DNA of 63,140 bases, counting the filler, from Octopus bimaculoides (Eukaryota), in the NCBI RefSeq assembly GCF_001194135.2. It is 6 parts of 6 records of this genome, joined end to end, with 100 filler letters (N's around TTAATTAATTAA, not from the genome) between each part and the next. Parts side by side here need not be neighbours in the genome. Positions count along the whole stretch, not along the records: positions 38,530 to 61,511 come from NC_068981.1; 5 more parts are not named here. One strand, 5' to 3'. The notes beneath the pieces are model-generated. The model saw only the letters and a list, made by a program, of their open reading frames with translations. It had not been told where the DNA came from and ran no database searches. Of the stretch, positions 38,750-59,057 are shown in pieces. How positions within the stretch are numbered: the stretch's first letter is position 1; each line of letters opens with the position of its first letter. The translations under genes and the position numbers were made by a program.

Positions 38750-39758
38750 ATATAGGATGATCCTGCAGCGTCAATTACAGCCTGCAGACGCTTCGGGTAG
38801 CCTTCCACGAGCGTGCTGCGGTGGTCTGCTGATAGTTTTCGCCCATTTTTCATGGCAGAACTTCTCGAGCTGTGTCAGATTGGATGGAGAACGTCGGTGC
38901 ACAACCAGCTCTAGATCTCGCCATAATTTTTCTATAGGATTGAGGTCTGGAGACTGGCTGAACCACTCCAAAACTGATTTTGTTGGTAGTAGACCAAGCT
39001 TTAGTGCTTTTTGACACATGCTTGGGGTCGTTATCTTGTTGAAACTTGAAATTGCGACCCAAGTGCAGATCTCTAGCAGACTTCAGCAGGTTTGCCTCCA
39101 ATATTTCTTGTACTTGACACTGTCCATGATACCTTGGATGGTTACCAACTCTCCAGGCCCTGCAGCTGAAAAACAGCCCCAAACACGATCGAGCCACCGC
39201 CATGCTTTACAGTGGGGACGGTGTAACGAGGTTGGTGAGCAGTGCTTTGTTTCCGTCAAACGTAGCGTTTCGTATTTTTTTCCAAATAACTCGACTTTGG
39301 GTCTCATCTCACCACAAAATCTTTCGCCACACGGTCATGGAATCATTAATGTGACTTTTGGCAAAGTTTAACGTAGCTTGCTTGTGTATAAACTTCAGAA
39401 GGGGCTTTTCTCTAGCTACCCTCCCTTGCAGGCCAGACCGCTGAAGTACTCTGGAAATTGTAGATGCATAGACATCTGTCCCAGTACTGGAAACTGAAGC
39501 TTTCAAGTCTTCCAGTGTTGCACCAGGGTTGGAGGTTGCCTCCCGGACCAGTTTTGACTTTGCTCTTCTAGTAAGTTTGCTCGGTCTCCCAGATCTTGGT
39601 AGGGTAGCAGTGGTTTTGTGCACTAACCACTTCTAAACTACAGTTTTAACAGTGCTTAGGAGCAATTCTAATGTTTTTGCAATCTTTTTATAGTCATTAT
39701 TTTCATTGTAATTTTGAATAATAATGTTTTTAAGTTCCTGAGACAGATGTTTGCCCAT
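38750..39758 (-). pseudogene. Tc1 DD34E transposase, near full length, disrupted
   Basis: MGKHLSQELK.., [71 protein letters not shown]. Confidence 0.9.
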
Positions 39759-42644: not shown

Positions 42645-44965
42645 CTAGCACTCATAATGCCAGACATCTCGCTTCATTGTCATTTCCTCCGTGAGCTCTA
42701 ACATCCTAAGATCGCTCCTCACCACTTCATTCCATGTCTTTCTGGGTTTCCCTCTCCTACAGATACCATCCACTTTTAGTGATTGGCACTTCTGTATACG
42801 GCTGACTTTACTCATACGCATCACATGTCCAAACCAACGCATTCTCCTCTCCTTCATGCCACATTTAATTTCTCATATACCCGACTTTGCTCTCAACACA
42901 GTTACGCTTTTCCGTGCATTCACACTGATGCTGCAAATCCAACGGAGCATAACACCTTCATTCCTCTCCAGTCTACGCATGTCCTCTGCATTCAGAGCCC
43001 ATGTCTTACTATCATAGAGTACAGCCGTTCCTACACAGACATCATACAATCTACCTTTCACAGTGAGAGAGAGACTTTCTTTTGCCAACAGAGGTAGTAG
43101 TTCTCTGAACTTCCTCTCTAGAAACAATACTTTCAGAGCATTCACCACCGTTACTGATTTGATCACCTAAGTAGCAGAAACTATCTACTACCTTACGAGA
43201 ATCTACTGAACGCATCATAGAGTCCAAATCCCTTGTATTCTTAGTGCGTATTGTTCCTGCACATCTGCCACACACGAAAGCGACCTTACCTTATTTGTTA
43301 ATCTATCTGTGATTCCACTGCGTCTTTTATGTGCGTGTCCATAGCTTACACTGCGTGCAGGGAATGAAATTTCTTCCCATTCCTTACCCACATATTGAGC
43401 ATAGCCATTTACCTGATGGAAACAAAATCTTATCTGTTCCTTGCTAGCAACAACTCTGGTCTTTGCTAGGTTAACTCAAGGCCCTCTGATTCCAGGTTTT
43501 GCTCCTATACTTGGAACTTCTCCAGTTTTGATTCAGATTCTGCAATAAGAACAAGGTCATCAGCATATAGCAGTTCCTATGGACATCCAGCTTTGAATTC
43601 CTCTGTTATGGCCTGGGGAACTATGATGAATAAATGTGGATTAAGAACTGATCCCTGGTGAACTCCAAATTGTACGCTAAATTCATCACTGTGTTCAAGG
43701 CCGACTCTCACCTTACTGACAACACCGCTGTACATGGCTTGTACGGCTCTAAGCCACTCCTCTACTCCTAGCTTCCTTATAAACCACCAGATAAGAGAGC
43801 GGAGAATCCTGTCGAAAGCTTTCTCCAGGTCGGTGAAAGCTAAGTACATGAGTTTACTTTTGGCCAAATACTTTTCTTGCAACTGTCTCACTAAGAAGAT
43901 GGCACCTGTGGTACATCTCCTAAGATTAAAACAAAACTGCATCTCATCTAGTTTAATTCTATTCCTAATCAATTAAGCAATAACTCTCTTTGTAATTTTC
44001 ATGACCTGGTCCAGCAGTTTAATACCTCTGTAGTTGTTTCTAAGACATCACCTTTACCTTTGTAGCGACTAACTATAATACTACTACACTAATCTTTGAG
44101 GATAATCCCTTCCTGAATAACCTAATTAACCAGGCGAGTGGCTAAGCTGTATCCCACACTGCCAGAGATTTTTTTATCAATTCGGCAGTGATACCCGATT
44201 GTTCTGGGGCTTTCTTAGCCTTCATATCTTTAGTTGCCTTATCTATTATACTGCTATCAACTCTGTTGGCTGGTCCCTCAATTGGTTCAATATTTGAAAA
44301 ACTCTCCTTCTCTCAATCATTCTCAACATTTATTAACCTTTCATAATGGCATCTTCACGAATCTTTCTTCTCTGAGTTACTAAGTACAAGCATACCATTA
44401 TCCATTTACACACATTTCTCACCTACCACATCTCTATTCTTTCTGATACACTGCTTTGCAAACTTGAACACCTCACGTCTCTGATCCTCACGCTGTAGAA
44501 CATTAGCAAATCTCTTACCTTCTGCTATTCCTTTAGCTATGTAAACCTGTGGTACTGTCCACCTCCTTCCACCACCATGTCACCCTTGGCCTAGCTGGGA
44601 CTTTACACCATCCACAGGTTTGGTCAGCAACCCCCAGTAAATTATCTCACAAGAACTTCAAGTTGTTCTCTAAGCTATATGTCCAATCCTCCTCCTCTTC
44701 CTCCACCTTCTCCTCCACCTCCTCCTCATCCTCTCTATAATAAGAGGCTTCCAGTAGAGTGCCTCTAAAATTTTGTTGGTTTGCTGGGTCTTTGAGCTTC
44801 CCTAATCTTCTTTTCCAGTATGGTCTATTTCTCCGAGTCTTTCTACTCCTATTTCTGAAGTCACTAATTATTAGGCTATGTTGCAGTGTATACTCTTCAC
44901 CTAGGAAAGACTCCGCATTTGCGAGTGTCAGCCTATCTCGACCTGCCTTATCTTCCGACCAGACT
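42645..44965 (-). pseudogene. RTE LINE ORF2 (end of APE region and reverse transcriptase)
   Basis: AIFLVRQLQEKY, AFTDLEKAFDR, GVHQGSVL, LLYADDL (43556-43567), FCYLG, LRWIC, RMRWFGHVMR, RGKPRKTW; multiple stops and frameshifts. Confidence 0.92.
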
Positions 44966-45118
44966 GATTAGTGATTAGATAACCAGCTAGTTACCTAATC
45001 ACTTATCAGTCTGGTGGGGTAAAATTAATAACAAATTCAAAATTGCCCGATGGAAACAATCCCTTTAAAAATCAATTTAAACAAATGAAGGTACCTGAGT
45101 TATCATTATCACCACCAC

Positions 45119-45167
<49 letters not shown>

Positions 45168-45225
45168 TCTCTCCACGTCGTTGTTGTCGCCGTCATTATT
45201 ATCACCAGCTAAAATATTGTGATAT

Positions 45226-45364
45226 TCTCCGCCGAGGTTGACTTTACCTTTCATCCTTTTGGAGTCGATAAATTAAGAACCAGTTGCGTACTGGGGTCGA
45301 TCTTATCGACTGGCCCCCCCTCCCTCAAAATTTCGGGCATTGTGCCTAGAGTAGAAAAGAATAT
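45226..45364 (+). mobile_element. Family C SINE, 5'-truncated
   Basis: CCGCCGAGGTTGACTTT..GTCGATAAATTAAG..TTGTGCCTAGAGTAGAAAAGAATATT matches 35024-35212. Confidence 0.8.
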
Positions 45365-45621
45365 TGCGATATTCTATACTTCATTACTGGCTAGAATATT
45401 GGGATTGCTAGGTATATGTGATTATTTGCTACATAACAAAATCCCCAGCATAATTTTCTGAATATATTTGCGTGAAAGTTTTGCATAGGGAATTTATCAT
45501 AAAGTTCAGGTGACAAGTGATGCAATCTTTCATTCCCGCACCAACTAAATCATTATGCTTTGTTTAATTGTTAAAAGGAAATAAATTTGCTATATGGAAT
45601 TTGTTCTTTTTTTTATAACAG

Positions 45622-45702
45622 AAGGAAGAATATGACTTAGCGTGGCTGTGGAACGTCAGCTATGCAGTGATTTTTGTATTTATTAGTTCGGCATCCGTCG
45701 TG
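45622..45702 (+). CDS. CLCN: CLC chloride channel/transporter internal exon (helix C region), phase 0-0
   Basis: Acceptor ttctttttttttataacag, donor GTG|gtgagt. The 81 nt encode KEEYDLAWLWNVSYAVIFVFISSASVV, a hydrophobic helix that splices in frame to the next exon. Confidence 0.85.
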
Positions 45703-46024
45703 GTGAGTAGACGCTGTTTCTAAATTTACATGACTACCGGATTGATTGATTTTAGAAACATACAAAATGGAACACTGAATTCAGTTTCTATCAAAGTCAA
45801 TTTATCCCTAACCTATAAATGAAAGTAGCAAGGTTTCAAATACAGCTACTATAATCTCTCTTCAAAAATACAAACGCACATGATCTTGCACGTGTAAATG
45901 CGTGTGTGTCTGTGCACGCGCGTAATATTTGTGTATATACAAACATACTCTTGTATATACGCGCACACACACTCATATAAAACACCAAAATTAAAAATCA
46001 CTTTATCAATAACACATTAGAAGC

Positions 46025-46452
46025 ATGTGATCTGTTTTGGCATGGTTTTCATTGCTGGATGCCCTTCCTAACACCAACCATCTCGTAGAGTGGACTGAGA
46101 GCTTTTTACGTGGCACCAGCACAGAACAGGTCAGTTCTCGCATGTCTTTTACAGCTGGATGCTATTCCAAAATGCCAAACACTTGACAGTGTGGACTGAA
46201 TGTTTTCTAAATGGCACCAGCACAGACAGGGTCACCAAGTAAGTTGCAAGACTATGAAGATAGTATCTGTGGTACATCCAAGAATAAAGCGAAATTGCAT
46301 CTCATCTAGTTTAATTCTATTCCTAATCAATTGAGTTATAACTCTCTTTGTAATTTTGATGACCTGGCCCAGCAGTTTGATACCTCTGTAATTGTTTCTA
46401 TCTAAGACATCACTTTTACCTTTGTAGCATCTAACTATAATACTACTACACC
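46025..46452 (-). mobile_element. Internally deleted RTE derivative (3' UTR fused to an RT fragment)
   Basis: 46025-46255 resembles the UTR at 41230-41350 (tandem about 90-bp units); 46262-46452 closely matches 43900-44090. Confidence 0.8.
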
Positions 46453-47089
46453 GCAGCTGTTAAAAACTATAGAAGATTTGCTAGTGGTTGTGTTAGACAA
46501 TTTCCATTTACTTGTAAGTGTGTATTTACATTTAAATATTCAAGCCACATTATATATGTTTTTACCTTATATATAATGACGACGTGTGACTACTCACTCT
46601 ATAATTTTTTATGTCCTATTCAGTAAAGAAATAATGTTAATTATCAAAATTCAGATTATTCTGAAACTTTTAATCACAAAGAAATTTTCGAAAGTAGTTA
46701 ACGACTCAGAATCTCTATTTCCCGAAAAGTAATTGTAATTATAGAAAGTAGAAGTTTTTGCATTAAGAGTCGATCTGTAAAATGTACATGTTGTCTCTAC
46801 AGTTAACTGCATGCCGGGTATTAAGTTCTCTTTGGATTTTTGGTCCCCTATAGCTTTAATTCAAAAGCTTTTCTCTCACTTTCTCTCTCTCTCACTCTCT
46901 CTCCCTCCCTCTGTATATTTCTATGTATGTATGGTTGGTTGGTTGACTGGCTGTCTGTCTGGATGTACATATCGAAATAAGGGTGCCATTGTTTAGGCTT
47001 TGATTAGGTTTCTTAATATACTAAACTACCATCTCATATAACCGTCGATCTTGTTTGTCTGGGCTACACAGCTGATATACTGATATCGT

Positions 47090-47540
47090 ATAGTACCAGT
47101 AGTCAAGATATCCTTAGCAGGATGGCATGCTCATAAACTCAGACTTTATCAGTACACCATCAGATGGATCAGACAACCAAACTTGGTGATCGAGGCCTGA
47201 AAGCCACTGCGATCTTTGCAGATGTCATCTTTGTCCTTCAGGCTGCAGTTAAAGTTTCCATGATAGTATCTCTTATTAATGACTTCTGCGCACCAATCTT
47301 TGTCTTAGATCCATGACACTCCACCACTGCTGCTTTGACCACTATCTTCATGGTGAAAGCAATAACAATATCTGAGATGATGCAACCAGTTATAGTAACT
47401 TATATACTGAGATAATGCAGCCTTAACTCATAGGCATTTGTGAGTGATAACCACAAAATCACCAGAACTTCGTGATATTTCTTTGCATCTGTTAAGAATG
47501 CATACATGGCAACTGCATTTTCTATGAAGCCAGGTGTCAG
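47090..47540 (-). pseudogene. HERO-like (RLE clade) LINE reverse transcriptase fragment
   Basis: rc PGFIENAVAMYAFLTDAKKYHEVLVILWLSLTNAY and TITGCIISDIVIAFTMKIVVKAAVVECHG resemble the HERO motifs LWLDLTNAYG and IITGCTIS..LAMN.IVKSAEVECRG (from memory of the family). Confidence 0.6.
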
Positions 47541-47749
47541 AGATCGTGCATTTCTGTACTTATGTATCAATGTAGCCATTATTTAGAGAAAAATAAATTT
47601 TCAACCGTCGAACAATGTAACTGAAACATATCTTTTCTTCTCCGTTAAGTAGAGAGATGGTTCAAAACTGTTCGATCTTTTTAGAGTTGCCCTTGTGGAT
47701 CTTGAATCTAAACACCACTAACATTCTCCATTAGCTAGCGACTCTCCCT

Positions 47750-47883
<134 letters not shown>

Positions 47884-48129
47884 GCCAGATCTCTTTTAGA
47901 TACTTCTACAGTTACTGCATGAACCACGAATAACGCTGCACTGTATTCTGCATGGTCCGTGAGCAGAGTATAACTCTACAACGTTAGTAACATACCGAAA
48001 TTTCGACTTGATTCATTCATGCCAAGCCCCATATGGCCTGTGCTCATAAGAATTTCGTTTTGAGAAACTCCAACTCTTTTGTATGATCATCCAGAAGTGG
48101 TGAAGACATTTATTATATCCACTTAACCC

Positions 48130-48330
48130 TTGAGATACCTACTTTACTGTTCATCAAACAGCTTCTTAGAAAATCTTAACGGTTTGGAAACTGAAAATCT
48201 CTACTTCCTAATCCTTATGTTTATTCGTTTTAAGTGCCACTCTGCTCTGCGAAGTGTTCTGAGTTTGTCCTTCAAACTGTCTCGAAGCTCTGCTAGTTGG
48301 GGACCCTTTCCATCGACAACCTTGTACAGA
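48130..48330 (-). pseudogene. HERO-like LINE ORF fragment upstream of RT
   Basis: rc QLAELRDSLKDKLRTLRRAEWHLKR..KPLRFSKKL resembles HERO LAELR..L..LRRAEWHRR..NPF.FTKKL; same strand and expected order relative to 47090-47540. Confidence 0.65.
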
Positions 48331-49552
48331 TTCCTGGGTGTTCACCGCTCCTGCTGCAATTGTATTGTATTGGGCATGCGTTTTTTTTCTTTTTTCATTC
48401 TTTTTTTGGTGGGGGGGGGGATTCTTGTCTTTTTCCCACTTCATTGTCGTTGATTATATCTGACGCATCGCTTATGATGATGGTTGACATTGCCTGCAGC
48501 CGACTGTCGGTATCATTCTTAACTCTTGTTTCTAGTATACTGCACCTATTCTTCAAACATTTTCCACGAGTTGTTTACAGTGACTATGTGATCATTTGTT
48601 GAACTATTCTTAATAGAGTTGGCGGTAGAGACACGTGATATAACATGTTACTGTAGGGTGAGTCATACTTATGCTCTCTTAAGACTTTCAAAGATGTAAT
48701 TCTGTGCTTTGAATCGTTTTATCCTTAGCCAGATACTTTATTTTGGCCAAATGGATTCGATATCGCGCAAACTCATACATTCATTGTCATATTAGTATCT
48801 TGCATTGTTGAAAACTTAAGTACCTCATTTCTATATGTTATGTAGTGTATATGCACTCACGTTGCTAAATATTGGAACTAGGAAAGCGATGTAGAGAAGA
48901 CACTCGAGAAACCTGCAGCTGTCTTCCTGTGCCTAAACATTATATGGTCCATACTTTTCATCAGCACCAGATTCTACATATATTTACCAACGGTGATCTA
49001 TATCCGCGAGATATGTAAAAAAAGACTAGTACAAGCTATAAAAATGTCCTAGTATCACAGTAAGAATATCATGACATGAGCACATCACGATTAAAAGAAG
49101 CGTAGAAAGATCGAAACTTAGTAGCTTAGGGGTGACTATCACCATGAGATGGCTGAAAATGACTATCTATGTGCCACACATGTCTATAAAGAAACCAATG
49201 ATAACTTCTCTCAAGTAAAAACCAAAGATCATGTGTAGGAAGTGAGACAAATCTGTCAAAATCTGTTCGAGGACTATGAATGAGGGATTGGAAAATATGT
49301 TTTGGCCTGGAAGCAGCAGGCTCATGATGGGATTTACAATTATACTCGGAGAAGAGCTGTTGTTGCATGACAGTCACTGGAAAGCTGAAAGAGTTAAGTT
49401 TGTAAAATTTTCATTTTCCTTTCTTTTTTTTTTTTTTCAAAAGTATGAAACTTGTTCCATAAATATTTTCTAAATAATTTACATCTATATAATACCATCT
49501 TAACATATACGGGCAGGAGAAAGTCTATTGTGAGTCTTTATGTTTATTTTAG

Positions 49553-49728
49553 TTTTTGAAACCGTCTGCTGGAAGTTCGGGAATACCTGAAGTGACTGCT
49601 TATTTAAATGGGACTTTTATACCAGAAACGTTCAATATAGGAACTCTGCTGGTAAAATTCCTGTCTTGTGCTTGTGCTATTGGCTGTGGAATGCCAGTAG
49701 GGCCAGAAGCTCCGATGATTCACATGGG
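49553..49728 (+). CDS. CLCN: CLC chloride channel/transporter exon (helices D-F, selectivity and gating motifs), ClC-6/7-like GPEGP branch, phase 0-2
   Basis: Acceptor tttatgtttattttag, donor GG|gtgagt. The 176 nt encode FLKPSAGSSGIPEVTAYLNGTFIPETFNIGTLLVKFLSCACAIGCGMPVGPEAPMIHM(G), with GSGIPE-like and GxEGP-like CLC signatures in canonical spacing. Confidence 0.95.
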
Positions 49729-50128
49729 GTGAGTAGATGATATTTGTTCTTATAAAGATAACCACCTCATTTCATAGCCACTGGTAAAAATAGTCACTTG
49801 CATTTCATGGTAATCAATTCCAAAGATGCATTTAGATTGTCATAAGCGAATACATAATCATTCATTGAAATTAAAAATATTAACAAACATTTTTGCCTAA
49901 TTATATGATACACAAGTTTCCTACTGCTTTCTAAATTGCTTTCGACATAATTATCGTGTATCTTCTAGCGCTGACCGTAACGTCAGATATTTTTCATTAT
50001 ATATCAAACATCATCTGTAGTTTGGTTTAGCAGTAAGCTACCTCAAATTATCCCATTTCGGAACTGTATCACTCCAGAATAGCCTGCTCATTTCCTTCTA
50101 AATATGTCAACCACCAAACACACACACG

Positions 50129-50215
<87 letters not shown>

Positions 50216-50277
50216 ATTTTATATATATAACGAAACGTTAGCACCGAGCAGTGTTTAGGTACATGCACAATTTAGGT

Positions 50278-50705
50278 TAGTTCAAACATATTTGTGACAT
50301 ATTTCAACTGCTAAAAGGCAAATTCATGGCAGTTACCGACCGAACAGAAAATACTTTTCTTATAGTAAAATGGTGTGAAAATACCCAGTTTTTTCAGTGT
50401 CGCCATCTATCAGGAATCTCAGATATCGCGCGATCTACCAGCGCAAATAAGTCAACGTTGTTGACTATATTTTACATAGAACTATTGCTTTATAAGATTT
50501 GTTCAGAGTAGCAGTTCTTAGGTACATCTCATTGATAAAAGCCAAGTAGCTTCAAACCTAGATGTCTAGGATTCCAAATAGATGGCGACACTGAACAAAT
50601 AGGGTGTTTTCACACCTTTTTACCATAAATGAAATATTTTCTCTAGGTAGCTGCAGTGAATTTACCTTTTAACAATTGAAATATATCACAAACATATTTT
50701 AACTA
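50278..50705. mobile_element. Foldback/MITE with about 130-bp imperfect inverted arms
   Basis: 50278-50409 is the inverse of 50579-50705; the inner ends CAGTGTCGCCATCTAT / ATAGATGGCGACACTG are perfect. Confidence 0.85.
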
Positions 50706-51362
50706 ATCTAAAGTTTAGATTAGTTAATATACATATATACATGCATGTGTGCGCTCACGTGTATGAGTGTCAATATGCAGTAAAAGGTATTTTATCGAGC
50801 ATCTACATAGAAAAAGTTTCATAGAAGATTTAAATCAGGGAAATTCAAATGGTATCAAAATTGGTGCAGTAGAGAAATACCTTATGGGCCTTAATTTCGT
50901 TAAATCGCCCAAAGGTAAGGGCTGAAATTTTCGAGTCATCATATTTCAGTTATGTTAGAAAGCATGGTGGCAATCTAGTACTGAATATTGAGTCAACATT
51001 GGTGCAGTAGAAAACACTTTGGGGGCAAAAAATTGTCAAATTATAGGTGCTTACTGGGCCACTTAATTGTAGTTATGTCTATGTGTGTGTAGATGTATAC
51101 GTATAACTAAGGGATCGAGAGAGTGGTGGGGAACTTGTGTATGTAGTCAACGAAAGAAAAATAAAAGAAGTGACAGTATTGCTTTCTACAATGCTTAAGA
51201 TAACCTATTATTAACATCTACGCTTTTAGGCAAATGTAAAAAGTGTAGCTTTGAATCTTCATCGGCATAAGGTGTCACTTAAATCTCATTCTTTGATAAA
51301 CTTTTGCATCGGATTGTACCTATTTTATTTGTATTGTCTGTACATGCATGTACGTATATATA

Positions 51363-51475
<113 letters not shown>

Positions 51476-52159
51476 GTATATATATATATATAATATCATA
51501 TAGCATAATATAATATAGTATAATGTAATATAATATAATATAATATAATATAATATAATATAAACGGCTAGGCGCAACATAATAACGTAAACAAAAAAAT
51601 TATCGTCACTAATTCTATATTTTCTCTAATATAAACCGACATATACGTATATACACATATATATGTATATGTGTATATATGCATATATATATATTATTTA
51701 TATTATTAATTAATTGAACGCCACGCATCCATTTCCAANNNNNNNNNNNNNNNNNNNNNNNNNNNNNNNNNNNNNNNNNNNNNNNNNNNNNNNNNNNNNN
51801 NNNNNNNNNNNNNNNNNNNNNNNNNNNNNNNNNNNNNNNNNNNNNNNNNNNNNNNNNNNNNNNNNNNNNNNNNNNNNNNNNNNNNNNNNNNNNNNNNNNN
51901 NNNNNNNNNNNNNNNNNNNNNNNNNNNNNNNNNNNNNNNNNNNNNNNNNNNNNNNNNNNNNNNNNNNNNNNNNNNNNNNNNNNNNNNNNNNNNNNNNNNN
52001 NNNNNNNNNNNNNNNNNNNNNNNNNNNNNNNNNNNNNNNNNNNNNNNNNNNNNNNNNNNNNNNTATATATATATATATATATGGTAATAGTATGACAACA
52101 AAATAATGAATGAGACCTCGATATTATGTAAATGGAGGAATTTATCGGTAATATGATAT

Positions 52160-52583
52160 GTGCAGTAAGCTCTCATGGCACTCATCTTGCACAGACTTTA
52201 TGGAAGCCGAGTTCATCGTACATGATTTGATTGGCAGAACCATGTCTAATCTGCAGAGAACGAGCTACCTCGTCGACTATAACTCACCGGTTCACCATAA
52301 CCAGGCTCTGGAGCTTACTGAATCTTCTCGTCAGTGGTGGATGTTGGCAGGCCTCCTGACACATTTGAAACGCCTTCTGACCAGAAAAATCGGATCATTG
52401 CTCTTCTTCTTTGGTGCATATTGCTTACACTATAAAGCCAGAAATAAAATGGCGTGATCAGGCTCAAACTTCGATCACGTGACAATAATAGTGCCAAATA
52501 TAAGCACGCATGTGCAGAATGCAGCGTGACAACAATAAAGTTATGTTATGGCGAAATTACGGATGATATTTGACTTTCTCTCG
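52160..52583 (-). mobile_element. Mariner element 5' part (TIR and N-terminal transposase, internally deleted)
   Basis: rc terminus CGAGAGAAAGTCAAATATCATCCG; translation RAMIRFFWSEGVS / TSTTDEKIQ / VDEVARSLQIRHGSANQIMYDELGFHKVCAR*VP*ELT (WVPRELT motif). Confidence 0.8.
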
Positions 52584-52693
52584 AATATATATATATATGT
52601 GTGTGTGCGTACGAGTGTGTGTTCGTGTGTGTGTGTGTGTGTGTGTGTTTGTTTGTGTGCAAGTATGCACGTACGTCTGTATGCATGTATGTA

Positions 52694-52752
<59 letters not shown>

Positions 52753-52960
52753 ACATATATATATTATTACCCTCTCTTGGAAATACTATTCTGTATAATT
52801 AGATCTGCTCTCCTGGAAACAATACATCTTGCAAGAGTATTTATCTGCTATACGCCGCCATGCAGCTCCACACGCACTTCTGTATGCACTTTACTTAGCA
52901 CTTGAGTTTGATCAAAGAGACTTCATGCACGATGCAAAGAGGTTCGAATATGAGACTTTA

Positions 52961-54041
52961 CACAGACATGCAAGAAGTAAATAGACACCTTTAATTTTCA
53001 AAATCTTTTATTTAATACGCAAAGCGAACAATTGAAATGTAATCGACAGGTAGGACTACATACTTTTGTATTTAGTTGACAGTCCCTTTGCACTTTTTAA
53101 TTCAGAAACTTTTTATGGCATTGGACTTTGTGATTGCCTCTTGTGGAATTTCTGCCCACTTTTCACGCAACAATCGAAACAATTAATCTTTAGATTTAGG
53201 TTTCTGTCGAGTTTTTCGTATAGCTCTATCTAGTATGCGCCAAAGATTTTCAATTGGGTTCATGTCAGGAGATTGACTCGGCCAAGGAAGCTTTTTGATC
53301 CCATTTTCAGACAGCCATTGTTGATTCCTTTTCACTGTGTGGCATGGAGCCCCATCTTCCATGAAAAAAACTCATTTTTCGTTATGTTATCGTATGAATA
53401 CATCGGAAGTAGTTCTTGCTTAAGTATTTCGATGTATTTTTCAGAATTTATGGTTCCAACACATTCGATCTGCTCAGAACGACCATTGTTGGTGACAGCT
53501 CCCCATAACATTACAGAGATATCACCATGTTTCACAGTTGATTGGAGTCGTTTCCAATCAAATTCCTGATTGGGAAGCCTCCAGACCCAAACACGTCTAC
53601 TGTCTGAAAATGATGTAAATCTGGATTCATCTGAGAAAATCACTCTATCCCAAAATGAACTGACTTTTCTGACATCTCCTTAGCTCATTTCTTTCTTTTC
53701 ATGATATTAATTGGTTGAAGAAGAGGTTTTGTTCTAGCTGCTCGTCCATAATAACCAGTTTTATGCAGATATGTAGCACACGTTCTTGGACTAACTTCTA
53801 GTTGTTTTGCAATGTCAGAAGCTTCAGCTTGCCCACCAATACGACCTTTTTGAAAATTTAACAGTTCTGCTGAATTTTTTGTGCGTGGCATGGTCACTCT
53901 TCGCAAATGTTTAATATAATGGTACCTGAAATAAAAAATAATAATTACATTGTAAATTCTACACCGCTGAAAACATATTAAGACGCTTAGAAAAGAAGGT
54001 TTGAAAATTAAAGGTGTCTATTTACTTCCTGCATATGTGTG
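52961..54041 (-). mobile_element. Tc1 transposon with both 41-bp TIRs and TA target-site duplication
   Basis: CACA(G/C)A(C/T)ATGCA(A/G)GAAGTAAATAGACACCTTTAATTTTCAA at both ends (3 mismatches), with TA on both sides. Confidence 0.92.
53080..53891 (-). pseudogene. Tc1 DD34E transposase, shortened HTH region, frameshifted
   Basis: MPRTKN.., GRAARTKPLL, VIFSDESRF, TVKHGDISVMLWGA, MEDGAPCH, SQSPDMNPIENLW. Confidence 0.9.
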
Positions 54042-54909
54042 TATAGTCTGATCGCTGAATAGATACCGCTATGTATTGCCACAATTCAGCTTCTGTGGAA
54101 GAGTTCGGTATTTAAAATAGCTGTCATAACAAAAGTTGACTCTGTCGGAGACCTGATTGAGCTAAATTTAGCAGTACCCCACCAAAATAAAAGCTATATC
54201 CGATGTGAGTTACAATGTATCGCATTAGATGGACATAATAAGTTGTTATTGATAAACCTGCTGGTGTTCACGGATGTTTAAGCGTTTCCGATTTCTTGGC
54301 GTAGATCTTTGTTAAAAATTCTTGACTTTATGTTTAGCAGAATTATAACCTTAAATTTGTGTATTATATACTTTTTACTGGGATCATTTCTCAACGACAT
54401 CGTCACTTCTCGGCTCATATGCTTGGGTATACGCCCAATCACCTATCCGTTGCAAAGGACAGTTGCCAAAGCAGTAGGAAATCTTTCTGACATACTCATA
54501 TATCTTTGGTGACACGCTGCACCTATACCACCGCCCCTTCAAACGAATTTCTGCCTTTCTTTTTCAAAGCGTACACCCAATATTTGACGTCAAATCAATG
54601 GTCGGAAATTATATTATATGCAGTGCTTTTTTATGTACCTCTGCTAATGGACGGATAAAGTCTCTACTGTCAAAGCGTTCTCTATAATAATGACATGCTA
54701 ATGAAAGGCCTCATAAATTCCGACTTAACTAATACATCCCGATGTTTTATTGATTTCTGCTCCCCCAAAATTGCACAATTTCCAGTAACTGGCTCATTAT
54801 TTTATTCTATTTATTATTATTTCTTTACATATTGAGCTTAGGCGAAGAATGGTGCCCTTGCCCTTCGCAGGCCCTTCCTCGTTGGCAAGATTGATTCGTT
54901 AATACTTCT

Positions 54910-55480
54910 CATGGACATTTATAAGTCAGCACCTTCAAAAAAGACAGGTGGTGGTGGAGGGAGGGGCTTCCAGAGAGACGGAATTCTAGGAAAGAAGGGC
55001 TGGAGATAGTGATTAGTGCATAGCCTGTAGAATTTGACACAGTATATGTGACTGAAAGAAGAAATACAAATTGTTTGTAGGCCAGAGGCTGGAGTGTATC
55101 ATTGACTGACTTTATGCCAATCAAATAGATGGCCCTTTTCTGGATGCAGTCTAGGATGTATGTTTGTGCAGCAGGTGTTGAAAAGAACACGTCTGCATAT
55201 TCCTATTGTAGGATACATTCGAAGTCTCTGTTCATAAAGTTAATGTTGATTGACTCTGTGTGTCTAGCTTGCGAGCAGATACATTTGGTTGGGAAATATG
55301 AGGCAGGAATGAAGAGCTGTGTTTCATGCATAAGAGTGGGTATCGTTGAATGTGATGTCAAGTAAGTCATTGGTAAATAAAAGGGAGAGTAGGTGATTGA
55401 CCCCCAAAACTGGAGAACGCTGGAGTTTGTAAAATAATGACGGAGCTCCATCAACACATAACAATATCCAAAACCCTCAA
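54910..55480 (-). pseudogene. CR1/L2-like LINE RT C-terminal fragment, heavily decayed
   Basis: rc ..LQ*EYADVFF..YILDCIQKRAIYLIG..DTLQPLAY resembles the EY...W..LLD.IQ.RA.RLI..LQPLA.RR pattern. Confidence 0.55.
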
Positions 55481-55789
55481 TACCTTGCGCTATACCATCT
55501 ATCAATCTAACAAAAACTATTGAAATACAAACTCAAAGCTTCACATTGAAGCCATTCAGAAATCTAAGCAATATTTTTCAAACATTTTGAACTGCCAAAG
55601 TGCGTTTGCGAAGATATTAGTGCCCTACTCAATTACTCTAGACTAATCATTGCGTCCGTCTAGATACTATTCACAAACCGAAATATACTCACTTTTGTCC
55701 ATAATAAAGATAGAGCCTCCTTTATCCGCCATTTTAATAACAATCAGTTAAGAAGCCTTGAGAGCCATTGTTTGCTTCTGTATCAAGGC

Positions 55790-55862
<73 letters not shown>

Positions 55863-56679
55863 GCCGTCATCAAAGAAATCACGTTTTACTTCAGCTCTAC
55901 AGAGTTTGTGGGAGAAAAAGATCGTTTGTTTTACACTGAATGGGATTGTATTTGTATTTGTTCTTTGTGCAATCGAATGAATGAAGGAACCTGCTAAATA
56001 ATGCTAGGTCTGTTTTTTTTTTATATGAGTTCTCACCTCGGGGGAGCTGTCGGTGTAATATTTGCTTTTGTAAAATTTCAAGATGATGTATGTCTTTCAA
56101 TAATAATAGTCAAGACAAACACAATAATGACTGAGAAAGAAGAGAAAAGTGCTGATGTAATAGTAGAAGATAGAAAGAGAGAGAAATTCAACCATAGTAC
56201 ATTAACGAGTTTAAATCTAGTAGCGTTGCTGTTATATTACACAAAGCAAGCAGGCGACAACAATAAAATGAACTTCGTGAACGATGACAACAACAACGAA
56301 AAATAACAATGTGAAAGACAACAAAACAATAATAAGTCAGTGTGAATAGTGACAGCAACAATAACTATAATATGACATCATTCCCTTCAACACTACCAGT
56401 ATCACTTTTAACAACAGCAACAATACGCACGCATTTATTTTTGATGGAGTGGTTTTCCGACGTTCTACTTAAATAGAAATGGAAGGTCCAACGTAAGCAG
56501 CAATGACCATTGTGTTTTGTTTCAGTTCCAACTGATCAGATTAGAACGTCTGCATTTTGGTTTCTTATATAAAGGACTTATTCCATTCGTCATGCAGTCT
56601 CTCTGTAACTAGCATCCTCTGCATACTGCATGTCGGATGAGTATACTGAGACTACTGACACGTGTATACGCGCTCAGGC

Positions 56680-57420
56680 TTCATCTACTGAAATTGCGCT
56701 ACAGTGTGCATGTGTGATGGCGGTTCGCAAGGCACGTTTTCCTGTAGCTCATCTCCTTGAGGGATCTGTAATCCTGGGTCGACCAAAATTGCGTACCTGG
56801 TGTCTGTTTTGATTACAGTTAGGGTTATCACGAGGTACGCATCGCTCTCTGCCAGTCGGGCAATGGGCTCGGGGAATGTTGCATATCAGCAATCGATACA
56901 GAGTTATTCGAGTAACAGAGAATCGACTTTCATAAGGAAATCCTGAACGTTAATGAAAACGAATGCTCTAGGGATTCGAAGGTCTTTCCGAACGGAGACT
57001 ATACTGAACGCCTTCCAGTAGACCTTGAACAGGCAGTGCTGTAGAGGGTCACTACCGGTTTGAGATAAAATCTCTTGGCATTGAAATGTTTTGAGACGGG
57101 TCTGTCCGAATGCGCGCAGAGTGATAAAACCATTTACATGCATTTATTCAGTGGCCGCTATTACTGACTCGTAGAGATATCTTGATCATTTGAATCTTCC
57201 TTGAAAATTGCCCTGACATCTTACTTTAGTCGTGCAAGGAAGGCAGTTTTCCTCTGATGACAATAGAAAATATCTGTATGTGGATGATGGGCAAACACTT
57301 TCGTCTTTAGTCAATCCTTCGTTGAGTCTTTCATATTTGACGTGGAAAGGAAGGTGGCTATGAAAAGAGAAGTCGTGTCTTCGATTGAATTTGTTGAAAA
57401 GTGGGTGAAAATATAAACGA
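56680..57420 (+). pseudogene. Tx1/L1 ORF2 C-terminal cysteine-rich region, decayed
   Basis: RPKLRTW; NAFQ*TLNRQCCRGSLPV*DK..RVCP / CAQSDKT / HAFIQWP (C-x2-C..H..C pattern); ERKVAMKREVVSSIEFVEKWV. Confidence 0.65.
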
Positions 57421-57724
57421 ATCGTAAGAGTAGATGTGGCCGTTTAAGTATAAACCGTTCAAGAACAATTCCAGACAGCATTTGCTCTTGGATGGGGTAT
57501 GCCTTAATTGGTCCAAGGTACAGGTCCTCTTGTTTCAGGAACATTGCTTCATCATCATCAACATCGTCATCGTCATCGTCGTCGTCGTCGTCTTCGTTGT
57601 CGTTGACGTTGGAATTTGTTTTTGTCCCGACTTCCCAAGTGATAGGAACTGAGATGACTTGACAAACAGGGTAGCCAGTGTTACCCAGAAATGAGCAAAG
57701 AAGAAGCTGACAGAATTGTTAGCT

Positions 57725-57900
57725 CGCAGAAGCGGTATTTTGTCTGTTTTTATGCTCTGAGTTTAAGTACCACCGGAGTCAGTTTTGCGTTTCATCCACT
57801 TAGGTATCGATAACATAGATACCAGTTGAACACTGGGTCGATGTAATCGACATACTCAACCCCCGAAAGTGTAGGCGTTGTGCTAAAATTTGAAACCAAT
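57725..57900 (+). mobile_element. Diverged family C SINE
   Basis: GCGGTATTT.GTCTG..TCTGAGTT..TCGATAA..ACCAGTTG..GGGTCGATGTAATCGAC. Confidence 0.7.
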
Positions 57901-58421
57901 ATATATGCATACATATAAATATATACAGTATACTATATATATATATATATATATAGTAACGGTGATAGCAAGTGGACCAGAGCCAACAATGGAAAGGGTG
58001 ATTGTAAACATGGTGTGCACGGAGGTCGAGATGGTATGAGAAATACTAATAATAAACGCATAAAAAACAATGGAAATGAAGTAACCATTAATGCTAATGC
58101 TAAAGCTAACATGGAGGGCAATTTAGGTAGAAATGACAATCAGAATGACAACAACGGCAACGGTGGTGACGGTGGTGATCGCCGTAATAACAATAATGAT
58201 GATAGTAATTTTAATGGTAATGATAATAGTAACGATAATAGTGGTGATAATAATGATAATAGTGATCATAACAGCACAGGTAGTAACAATGGGTAGGACA
58301 GGGTCAGTTGTAACTGAAGGCACTGAATTAATCCGGACCACCGGAGAGTACAGTTTCGAATTATTTGTGCTCATTCTCAGGCATAGCAGTAGTTTGCTCG
58401 AGCTCGTGATATAAAGAAAAG

Positions 58422-58789
58422 AAGTGACAACCAGTCATTGATCTTGCAACAAGCAAATTAACTTGTTAGAAAATTTCTATAGGAATTGAAATCAGTATTT
58501 ATACTGAGAAGTGTTGTTTATCGCCAATTCAACATGGTCCCATCGCTGGAAGATGGTAGGGGTTCGTTCCCTTCTTTGCAATATACATTGGATGCAGATT
58601 ACATCGAATAACCAGCTGGAGGAAACGTCCTCCTGGTGTTAAAATGGTAGTAACGTCGGTTCCTACAGAACAACCATGTTGAAGTGGCGATAAACATTAC
58701 TTCTCAGTATAGTTATTGCTTTCATCTCTTACAGAAATTTTGTAATTAACTAATTTGCTTGTTGCAAGATCAGTGACTAGTTTGTACTT
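58422..58789. mobile_element. Foldback/MITE with about 117-bp inverted arms
   Basis: 58422-58538 is the inverse of 58673-58789 (GATCTTGCAACAAGCAAATTA, TATACTGAGAAGT, TTTATCGCCA.TTCAACATGGT). Confidence 0.88.
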
Positions 58790-58889
58790 ATTTTCAATAC
58801 ATCGCGAGCCGGAGCGAACTACTGCTGGAAGCTCGCTATCGTGAACGGGTCATAAAAGCTACCATTCCCTATCCAATCAAATAATAAAT

Positions 58890-59057
58890 GGCAGGTGTGA
58901 CTGTGGGGTAAAAAGCTTGCTTCCCAACCACATGGTTCTTGCTTCAGTTTCACTGCGTGGTACCTTGGGAAGTCGTCTTCTACTATAGCCTCGGGTCGAC
59001 CAAAGCATTGTAAGTGAATTTGGTAGTCGGAACTGAAAGAAAACTGTGTATTTTTGT
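58890..59057 (+). mobile_element. Family A SINE head, cut off by a gap
   Basis: Matches the heads at 61612 and 62785. Confidence 0.8.

What the first reader, a model, noticed from the sequence alone, without database searches (positions are those of the whole stretch)
49571..49591. CLC selectivity motif reads SSGIPE; one A-to-I edit would restore GSGIPE
Seen: codons GGA AGT TCG GGA ATA CCT GAA. The normally invariant first Gly of GSGIPE (G106 in E. coli ClC-ec1) is an AGT Ser, while the central Ser is TCG. Known: inosine is read as G, coleoid cephalopods recode many neural transcripts, and ADARs favour a 5' A/U and 3' G context, which A49574 has. Inference: editing AGT to GGT would regenerate the consensus filter, allowing two selectivity variants from one gene. 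The cephalopod origin is itself inferred, and I found no convincing exon-complementary sequence nearby.
Basis: partly seen in the sequence, partly recalled or inferred. Interest (0 to 1): 0.75.

Follow-up and report, generated by a model that had tools for sequence, protein, structure and literature searches.

The report
Octopus CLC exon, Gly-to-Ser substitution
This is an ordinary coding exon of a fast-evolving octopus chloride/proton transporter (CLC) gene in which one species changed the first glycine of the GSGIPE pore motif to serine, a position that also varies in relatives, and nothing available here shows that RNA editing reverses it.

Summary
Bases 49571-49591 read GGA AGT TCG GGA ATA CCT GAA (G-S-S-G-I-P-E). 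They lie inside a real CLC exon (49553-49728, + strand) with canonical splice sites and a Pfam Voltage_CLC match. The cephalopod guess is also right: the piece is colinear at 87-89% DNA identity with the Octopus vulgaris locus of 'chloride channel protein A-like'.

O. vulgaris, O. sinensis and a more distant octopod all have GGT (Gly) at this codon, as do about 91% of the animal orthologs checked. A49574 is therefore a derived G-to-A change on the window's own branch.

The position is not invariant in this CLC subfamily:
- The 143 best homologs have G 76%, S 14%, A 10%.
- Among animal orthologs, the bird and newt members listed have Pro, a copepod has Ser, and an anemone and a sponge have Ala.

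In ClC-ec1 this residue contacts chloride only through its backbone. The exon evolves as fast as the flanking introns, with 7 nonsynonymous to 1 synonymous changes on this branch.

The editing idea could not be tested, because no RNA data were reachable. The ADAR neighbour context fits 10% of all adenosines, no pairing partner was found in the piece, and the base rate is low.

Best reading: a tolerated missense substitution in a weakly constrained paralog. Low interest.

The parts
49553..49728 (+). Coding exon of an octopus CLC gene, the ortholog of O. sinensis XP_029644599.2 'chloride channel protein A-like'. It encodes FLKPSAGSSGIPEVTAYLNGTFIPETFNIGTLLVKFLSCACAIGCGMPVGPEAPMIHMG. The last Gly codon is split by the intron.
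   Evidence: (Pfam Voltage_CLC, E=4.8e-12). tblastn to P0295 gives 78% identity, E=7e-26. Colinear with the O. vulgaris locus. AG acceptor at 49551-49552, GT donor at 49729-49730.
49571..49591 (+). Filter motif 1, read as G-S-S-G-I-P-E. SSGIPE stands in place of the usual GSGIPE. The central Ser (TCG, 49577-49579) is intact.
   Evidence: Gap-free alignment to AtCLC-a AAGPGIPE, CLC-7 AAGSGIPQ and CLC-2 AVGSGIPE.
49574..49574 (+). Derived A, giving codon AGT (Ser). O. vulgaris and a more distant octopod have G here (GGT, Gly).
   Evidence: Three-species alignments. The O. sinensis and O. vulgaris proteins read AGGSGMPQ. 123 of 135 animal orthologs have G.
49639..49639 (+). Second G-to-A change specific to the window's branch (ATG to ATA, Met to Ile at exon codon 29). 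It sits in the same 5' U / 3' G neighbour context.
49700..49714 (+). Second filter motif, G-P-E-A-P. The gating glutamate is GAA at 49706-49708. Ala replaces the usual Gly after it, a feature of this octopus paralog.
   Evidence: E in 149 of 149 homologs; G 140, A 6, V 2 at the next position. A only in the O. sinensis/O. vulgaris members of this paralog.
45622..45702 (+). The preceding coding exon, KEEYDLAWLWNVSYAVIFVFISSASVV, phase 0 at both ends.
   Evidence: tblastn to P0295 gives 89% identity, E=2.7e-10. AG at 45620-45621 and GT at 45703-45704. 3 differences in 81 nt from O. vulgaris.
50271..50712 (+). Long imperfect hairpin in the downstream intron, probably a MITE-like inverted repeat. 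It is not complementary to the exon.
   Evidence: Arms of 82 and 74 nt, 81-82% complementary. MFE -183.7 kcal/mol, z=-21.8 against shuffles. Present at the same place in O. vulgaris.

Best explanation
The region is one exon of the octopus ortholog of 'chloride channel protein A-like'. This gene belongs to the animal CLC clade that NCBI names after Dictyostelium ClcA-D, marked by the motif G-x-G-[LM]-P-V-G-P-E.

By homology the protein is a Cl-/H+ exchanger. The gating glutamate is in this exon. The second, 'proton' glutamate is present in the orthologs (SMEEVSSFW).

In the window's species a G-to-A transition changed GGT (Gly) to AGT (Ser) at the first position of GSGIPE. The substitution is tolerated. 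In ClC-ec1 this residue touches chloride only through its backbone amide at the internal site, and relatives carry Ser, Ala or Pro here. This paralog is also under weak constraint in Octopus. The protein is made with SSGIPE from the genomic sequence.

Shown here: the exon, the gene's identity, the octopus origin, the direction of the change, and the variability of the position.

Inferred: that the change is functionally tolerated, and that the protein is an exchanger.
For: - Exon and family.
- Orthology and synteny: window 42979-51738 is colinear with O. vulgaris OX597814.1 at 87-89% identity. The gene spans about 236 kb in O. sinensis, which explains why the piece holds only two exons.
- Direction of change: window AGT, O. 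vulgaris GGT, outgroup octopod GGT. The other octopus paralog and nearly all molluscs have G.
- Position is variable: G 108, S 20, A 14 among 143 aligned best representatives. Among named and animal orthologs: G 123, P 7 (six bird members and a newt), S 3 (the copepod Tigriopus californicus and two unnamed Logan proteins), A 2 (Exaiptasia, Oscarella). In the same alignment the columns L-N-G, the gating E and the final Gly are 100% conserved and are intact in the window.
- Weak constraint: 7 nonsynonymous to 1 synonymous change on the window branch, 8:2 on the O. vulgaris branch and 3:6 on the outgroup branch. Exon divergence is 8.2% against 8.3% outside the exons.
- Paralog rate: O. bimaculoides against O. 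sinensis is 86% identical for this paralog, while the other paralog is 89% identical between Argonauta and Octopus.
- Backbone-only role of Gly106 in ClC-ec1: PMC5859129.
Against: - Among animal orthologs Gly is strongly preferred (91%). Both the nearest sequenced relative and the outgroup octopod keep it, so the change may not be fully neutral.
- No functional data exist for the Ser variant.
- Only two exons of the gene could be examined, so its integrity in this species is not shown.
- RNA-level reversal was not tested.
Confidence: 0.82

Rival explanations
1. Restorative A-to-I recoding. ADAR edits A49574 in some transcripts, so AGT is read as GGT and part of the protein pool carries the ancestral GSGIPE. 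The G-to-A substitution became fixed because editing masks it (the harm-permitting model), or because having both isoforms is useful.
For: - The source is a coleoid.
- The ancestral state is G.
- The neighbour context is 5' A and 3' G.
- A very stable intronic hairpin that could in principle attract ADAR lies 543 nt downstream of the exon.
- Sense-strand A/G differences make up 11 of 21 exon differences against O. vulgaris, compared with 167 of 637 outside the exons (Fisher p=0.012, a post hoc test).
- The harm-permitting model is established in the literature (PMC6881472).
Against: - No RNA evidence was reachable. No transcript-derived protein carrying this exon is in the collection.
- The site pairs weakly in local folds, with pairing probability 0.33 and only a 7-bp helix. 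The fold of the exon with its flanks is no better than shuffled sequence (z=-0.03).
- The best long-range duplex in the 23-kb piece is matched by 8 of 25 control sites.
- The neighbour context fits 10% of all As.
- After correction, potential restorative sites are edited less often than synonymous sites overall, and median editing levels are low (PMC8249491; PMC6881472).
- Natural Ser, Ala and Pro variants show that editing is not needed to explain tolerance.
- Expression of this paralog in nervous tissue is unknown.
Confidence: 0.04
2. The A is not the species' fixed state. It is either a sequencing or assembly error in a draft assembly with many gaps, or one allele of a segregating polymorphism.
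For: - The piece is draft-quality, with three internal N gaps.
- The site differs from every other octopod sequence retrieved.
Against: - The same branch carries seven other point changes in this exon and about 8% divergence throughout. A real substitution is therefore the simplest reading.
- Per-base error rates of consensus assemblies are far lower than this divergence (own knowledge).
- Polymorphism cannot be told apart from fixation here. If it is a polymorphism, it is still a tolerated missense variant.
Confidence: 0.06
3. The paralog is decaying in this lineage, and the Ser is one symptom of a gene that is losing its function.
For: - The nonsynonymous to synonymous ratio is 7:1 on the window branch, giving omega of about 2.3, which does not differ from neutral expectation (binomial p=0.38).
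- The exons diverge as fast as the introns.
- The exon holds several residues that are rare in the family: K3, T15, E25, G30, A53.
Against: - Both exons are open with intact splice sites.
- Every 100%-conserved column is kept: L-N-G, the gating Glu and the final Gly.
- The O. vulgaris branch shows the same high ratio, yet O. sinensis has a full-length gene model.
- An O. bimaculoides model for the C-terminal 600 residues is intact, with Voltage_CLC and CBS Pfam matches. It is not shown that the window is from that species.
Confidence: 0.08

Closest known systems
Animal 'chloride channel protein A/B/C/D-like' CLCs, named after Dictyostelium ClcA-D. Examples: O. sinensis XP_029644599.2, O. vulgaris CAI9715288.1, Haliotis rufescens XP_048253453.1.
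   Same: - The subfamily signature G-x-G-[LM]-P-V-G-P-E, the L-N-G triplet, the exon boundaries and the Pfam Voltage_CLC match all agree.
- The locus is syntenic with the O. vulgaris gene.
   Different: - Ser replaces Gly at the first position of motif 1. This was seen only in the window's species among the octopods retrieved.
- Ala follows the gating Glu, a feature shared by this octopus paralog only.
Solved CLC exchangers and channels: AtCLC-a (8iab), CLC-7 (7jm6, 7bxu), CLC-6 (8jpj), CLC-2 (8ta2), ClC-ec1 (1ots).
   Same: - The exon aligns without gaps across helix D to helix F in the four best matches.
- The central Ser and the gating Glu are conserved.
   Different: - In the four alignments printed (AtCLC-a, CLC-7, CLC-2, CLC-6) the first position is Gly.
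- AtCLC-a changes the central Ser to Pro (GPGIPE). That is the known nitrate-selectivity switch, and it is a different residue from the one changed here.
Coleoid A-to-I recoding, in particular 'restorative' editing under the harm-permitting model (Jiang and Zhang 2019, PMC6881472; Shoshan et al. 2021, PMC8382921).
   Same: A coleoid gene carries a genomic A where the ancestor had G, at a nonsynonymous site with a permissive neighbour context.
   Different: - No DNA/RNA mismatch has been observed.
- No double-stranded structure was found at the site.
- The gene has not been reported as edited in the papers searched.

Membership tests
CLC family (Pfam PF00654 Voltage_CLC) | Profile match above the curated cutoff | tested here: met
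   E=4.8e-12, 46.1 bits against a cutoff of 24.8, profile positions 13-67.
CLC family (Pfam PF00654 Voltage_CLC) | Motif 1 G-S-G-I-P-E with the chloride-coordinating central Ser | tested here: met
   The central Ser (TCG) and G-I-P-E are present. The first position is Ser, not Gly. That position varies (G, S, A, P) among members.
CLC family (Pfam PF00654 Voltage_CLC) | Gating glutamate in G-(K/R/P)-E-G-P | tested here: met
   G-P-E-A-P at 49700-49714. The Glu is 100% conserved among 149 homologs.
CLC family (Pfam PF00654 Voltage_CLC) | Rest of the transmembrane domain, the proton glutamate and the C-terminal CBS pair | not testable with these tools
   These exons lie outside the 23-kb piece. 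In the orthologs the Glu-Glu pair (MEEVSSFW) is present in P0295 and P0311, and the CBS Pfam match (PF00571) is on record for P0311 only.
Animal ClcA-D-like CLC subfamily, octopus 'A-like' paralog | Orthology by synteny and best match | tested here: met
   87-89% DNA identity and colinearity with O. vulgaris OX597814.1 over about 9 kb. Exon identities to P0295 are 89% and 78%, against 43% and 69% to the other paralog P0244.
Coleoid A-to-I recoding site | Genomic A read as G in cDNA from the same individual | not testable with these tools
   No reads are accessible. No transcript-derived protein with this exon is in the collection.
Coleoid A-to-I recoding site | The site is embedded in double-stranded RNA | tested here: inconclusive
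   No partner was found in the piece. The other exons of the mRNA, where coleoid partners often lie, were not available.
Coleoid A-to-I recoding site | ADAR neighbour preference (5' not G, 3' G) | tested here: met
   The context is A-[A]-G. It is shared by 10% of all As in the piece.
Coleoid A-to-I recoding site | The organism is a coleoid cephalopod | tested here: met
   The piece is syntenic with O. vulgaris. The species itself was not identified.

The most novel reading that the evidence does not exclude
A49574 is a species-specific restorative recoding site. ADAR converts Ser (AGT) back to the ancestral Gly in the loop that forms the internal chloride site of a CLC exchanger, and this masking allowed the G-to-A substitution to fix. 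The second branch-specific G-to-A change at 49639 (Met to Ile, same neighbour context) could be another such site.
Probability: 0.04. Interest if true: 0.5.

Novelty: already known. Interest (0 to 1): 0.15.

Why it matters
As it stands, little. It is a lineage-specific missense change in an annotated gene family, at a motif position that turns out to be less invariant than textbooks suggest for this CLC clade.

Two minor points may be useful:
- The N-terminal exons of this paralog, including this one, are missing from the only O. bimaculoides model retrieved (P0311 begins after them). The window's species was not identified.
- Natural Ser, Ala and Pro variants at the first GSGIPE position give a ready set for testing what that residue does at the internal chloride site.

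If the site were edited, it would be a clean example of restorative recoding inside a transporter's ion pathway. It could be tested with public RNA-seq.

Tried and rejected
- The word-index search with the exon alone found a single protein, P0001. The exhaustive representative search and two profile searches were needed to reach relatives.
- I looked for further CLC exons in the piece by tblastn with Haliotis, Nymphon, Branchiostoma and Octopus proteins. Only 45622-45702 and 49553-49728 were found.
- I tried to name the species behind the Logan runs SRR118693xx through the paper library, without a usable hit.
- I first took that species to be the window's closest relative, because the 93% column identity was inflated by three identical rows. 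Pairwise BLAST shows it is the outgroup, at 83-84% against 89% for O. vulgaris. The branch assignments were revised accordingly, and the direction of change at 49574 is unaffected.
- Genomic look-ups of P0295 and P0311 failed. For P0308 the gene range was too long to fetch.
- The supplements of Shoshan et al. 2021 hold no chloride-channel entries, and a full-text search found no octopus CLC editing report.
- The first duplex scan timed out and was repeated at a coarser step.
- Mutually exclusive duplicate exons were considered and rejected. The piece holds only one copy of the exon.

Full report
**Observation**

Bases 49571-49591 read GGA AGT TCG GGA ATA CCT GAA. In frame this gives G-S-S-G-I-P-E within FLKPSAGSSGIPEVTAYLNGTFIPETFNIGTLLVKFLSCACAIGCGMPVGPEAPMIHMG. 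The segment is a real exon, 49553-49728 on the + strand. It follows ...ttttag and is followed by gtgagt. It matches Pfam Voltage_CLC at E=4.8e-12, 46.1 bits against a cutoff of 24.8.

The exon aligns without gaps to the motif-1/motif-2 region of the best-matching solved CLC structures. AtCLC-a reads AAGPGIPE, CLC-7 AAGSGIPQ and CLC-2 AVGSGIPE, and in the ClC-ec1 match query residue 8 falls on residue 106.

**What the gene is**

The exhaustive search with the exon returned CLCs that share the signature G-x-G-[LM]-P-V-G-P-E in place of the usual G-K-E-G-P. The named relatives are the animal proteins that NCBI calls 'chloride channel protein A/B/C/D-like', after Dictyostelium ClcA-D. They occur in molluscs, brachiopods, cnidarians, echinoderms, amphioxus, tunicates, chelicerates, copepods, and some birds and a newt.

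Octopuses have two paralogs:
- A conserved 'C-like' one: P0244 (O. vulgaris), P0310 (O. sinensis), P0309 (Argonauta).
- An 'A-like' one: P0295 and P0308 (O. sinensis), P0306 (O. vulgaris).

The window's two exons match the A-like paralog. Exon 45622-45702 is 89% identical to it and exon 49553-49728 is 78% identical. Window 42979-51738 is colinear with the O. vulgaris locus on OX597814.1 at 87-89% DNA identity. The source is therefore an octopus and the locus is orthologous.

The gene spans about 236 kb in O. sinensis. That explains why no further exon lies in the 23-kb piece.

The orthologs carry the Glu-Glu pair (SMEEVSSFW) that, in established CLC knowledge, marks Cl-/H+ exchangers rather than channels. 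A CBS Pfam match is on record for P0311 but not for P0295. That the window's protein is an exchanger is an inference.

**Direction of the change**

At exon codon 8 the window has AGT. O. vulgaris has GGT, and a more distant octopod known only from six Logan runs also has GGT. Pairwise identities place that third species as the outgroup: 83-84% against 89% for window to O. vulgaris. The other octopus paralog, Haliotis and nearly all other molluscs have Gly as well. A49574 is thus a derived G-to-A transition on the window's terminal branch.

**Is the Gly invariant?**

No. Among the 143 best representatives that align at this column, 108 have G, 20 have S and 14 have A. In the same alignment L-N-G, the gating Glu and the final Gly are 100% conserved.

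Ser-bearing members include a choanoflagellate, a foraminifer, an amoebozoan and several unnamed eukaryotes. Among 135 named or animal orthologs the counts are:
- G 123.
- P 7: six bird members and a newt, all reading GSPSGLPE or a close variant.
- S 3: the copepod Tigriopus californicus and two unnamed Logan proteins.
- A 2: Exaiptasia and Oscarella.

In ClC-ec1 the first Gly contributes only its backbone amide, to the internal site. The central site, which sets selectivity, uses the side chains of Ser107 and Tyr445 (PMC5859129). The known selectivity switch is Ser-to-Pro at the central position, as in AtCLC-a (for the sequence; own knowledge for the function). 'Two selectivity variants' is therefore not the expected outcome of a Gly/Ser difference at this position.

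**Constraint on the exon**

- The window branch has 7 nonsynonymous and 1 synonymous change in this exon.
- The O. vulgaris branch has 8 and 2.
- The long outgroup branch has 3 and 6.

The window-branch ratio does not differ from neutral expectation (binomial p=0.38). It differs marginally from the outgroup branch (Fisher p=0.05).

The two exons differ from O. vulgaris at 8.2% of sites, the same as the 8.3% seen in 7,638 aligned non-exon positions. The A-like paralog is 86% identical between O. bimaculoides and O. sinensis, while the C-like paralog is 89% identical between Argonauta and Octopus, a much deeper split by own knowledge of octopod phylogeny. Gly-to-Ser is thus one of many replacements in a weakly constrained paralog whose truly invariant residues are nevertheless kept.

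**The editing hypothesis**

It could not be tested directly. No reads are accessible, and no transcript-derived protein with this exon is in the collection. The indirect evidence is weak.

- The neighbour context is shared by 5 of 44 exon As and by 10% of all As in the piece.
- The exon with about 100 nt of flank on each side folds no better than shuffled sequence (z=-0.03).
- A49574 has a pairing probability of 0.33 and sits at most in a 7-bp helix.
- Its best long-range duplex in the piece is matched by 8 of 25 control sites.
- After the authors' correction, potential restorative sites are edited less often than synonymous sites when all levels are counted, and more often only above 10% editing (PMC8249491).

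Two observations lean slightly the other way:
- A very stable intronic hairpin lies at 50271-50712 (-183.7 kcal/mol, z=-21.8), 543 nt downstream of the exon. It is shared with O. vulgaris.
- Sense-strand A/G differences are over-represented among exon differences from O. vulgaris: 11 of 21 against 167 of 637 (Fisher p=0.012, a post hoc test).

Neither places A49574 in double-stranded RNA. I put the chance of appreciable editing at this site at a few per cent.

**Verdict**

This is a real CLC filter exon from an octopus. It carries a derived, probably tolerated Gly-to-Ser substitution at a motif position that varies naturally in this subfamily. The claims of invariance and dual selectivity are not supported, and editing remains an untested, low-prior possibility. 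Public genomic and RNA reads would settle it.

Noticed in passing
window 50271-50712 (+): A long imperfect hairpin sits in the intron 543 nt downstream of the exon. Its arms are 50271-50427 and 50561-50712. MFE is -183.7 kcal/mol, z=-21.8 against shuffles. It is present at the same place in O. vulgaris. It looks like a MITE and would be double-stranded in the pre-mRNA.
   Followed up: partly
window 45622-45702 and 49553-49728 against L010 (O. vulgaris): The two exons diverge from O. vulgaris as fast as the surrounding non-coding DNA (8.2% against 8.3%). The nonsynonymous to synonymous ratio is 7:1 on the window branch and 8:2 on the O. vulgaris branch, but 3:6 on the outgroup branch. This suggests relaxed or positive selection on this paralog within Octopus.
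   Followed up: partly
window 45622-45702 and 49553-49728 against L010: Sense-strand A/G differences make up 11 of 21 exon differences, against 167 of 637 non-exon differences (Fisher p=0.012, post hoc). Nine of the eleven have A in the window and G in O. vulgaris. Several on the O. vulgaris branch are A-to-G changes away from the family consensus (I to M, N to S, I to V).
   Followed up: partly
window 49709-49711: Ala replaces the near-universal Gly right after the gating glutamate (G-P-E-A-P). Among named orthologs it is found only in this octopus paralog. Among the 148 best representatives aligned at that column, 6 have Ala.
   Followed up: partly
window 38757-39623 (-) and 53183-53906 (-): Two decayed Tc1/mariner-type transposase remnants: HTH_Tnp_Tc3_2 at E=1.7e-19, and DDE_3 at E=6e-11. 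Their reading frames are broken.
   Followed up: partly
window 43577-43972 (-): A reverse-transcriptase fragment (RVT_1, E=2.5e-8) lies in the upstream intron. The region is colinear with O. vulgaris, so the insertion predates the split of the two species.
   Followed up: partly
window 51739-58890: About 7 kb of the downstream intron has no counterpart at the O. vulgaris locus. It includes an N gap and one of the transposase remnants. It is either an insertion in the window's lineage or a deletion in O. vulgaris.
   Followed up: no
proteins P0296, P0298, P0299, P0301, P0302, P0305, P0318 (a newt and six bird members): The ClcA-D-like CLC clade is not confined to invertebrates. Several birds and a newt have members, all with Pro at the first motif position (GSPSGLPE or a close variant) and G-L-F-C-G-P-E in motif 2.
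   Followed up: no
protein P0311 (O. bimaculoides XP_014778354.1): The only O. bimaculoides model retrieved for this paralog starts at MEEVSSFW. It lacks the N-terminal exons, including the one studied here. The N-terminal part of the gene appears to be missing from that annotation.
   Followed up: no
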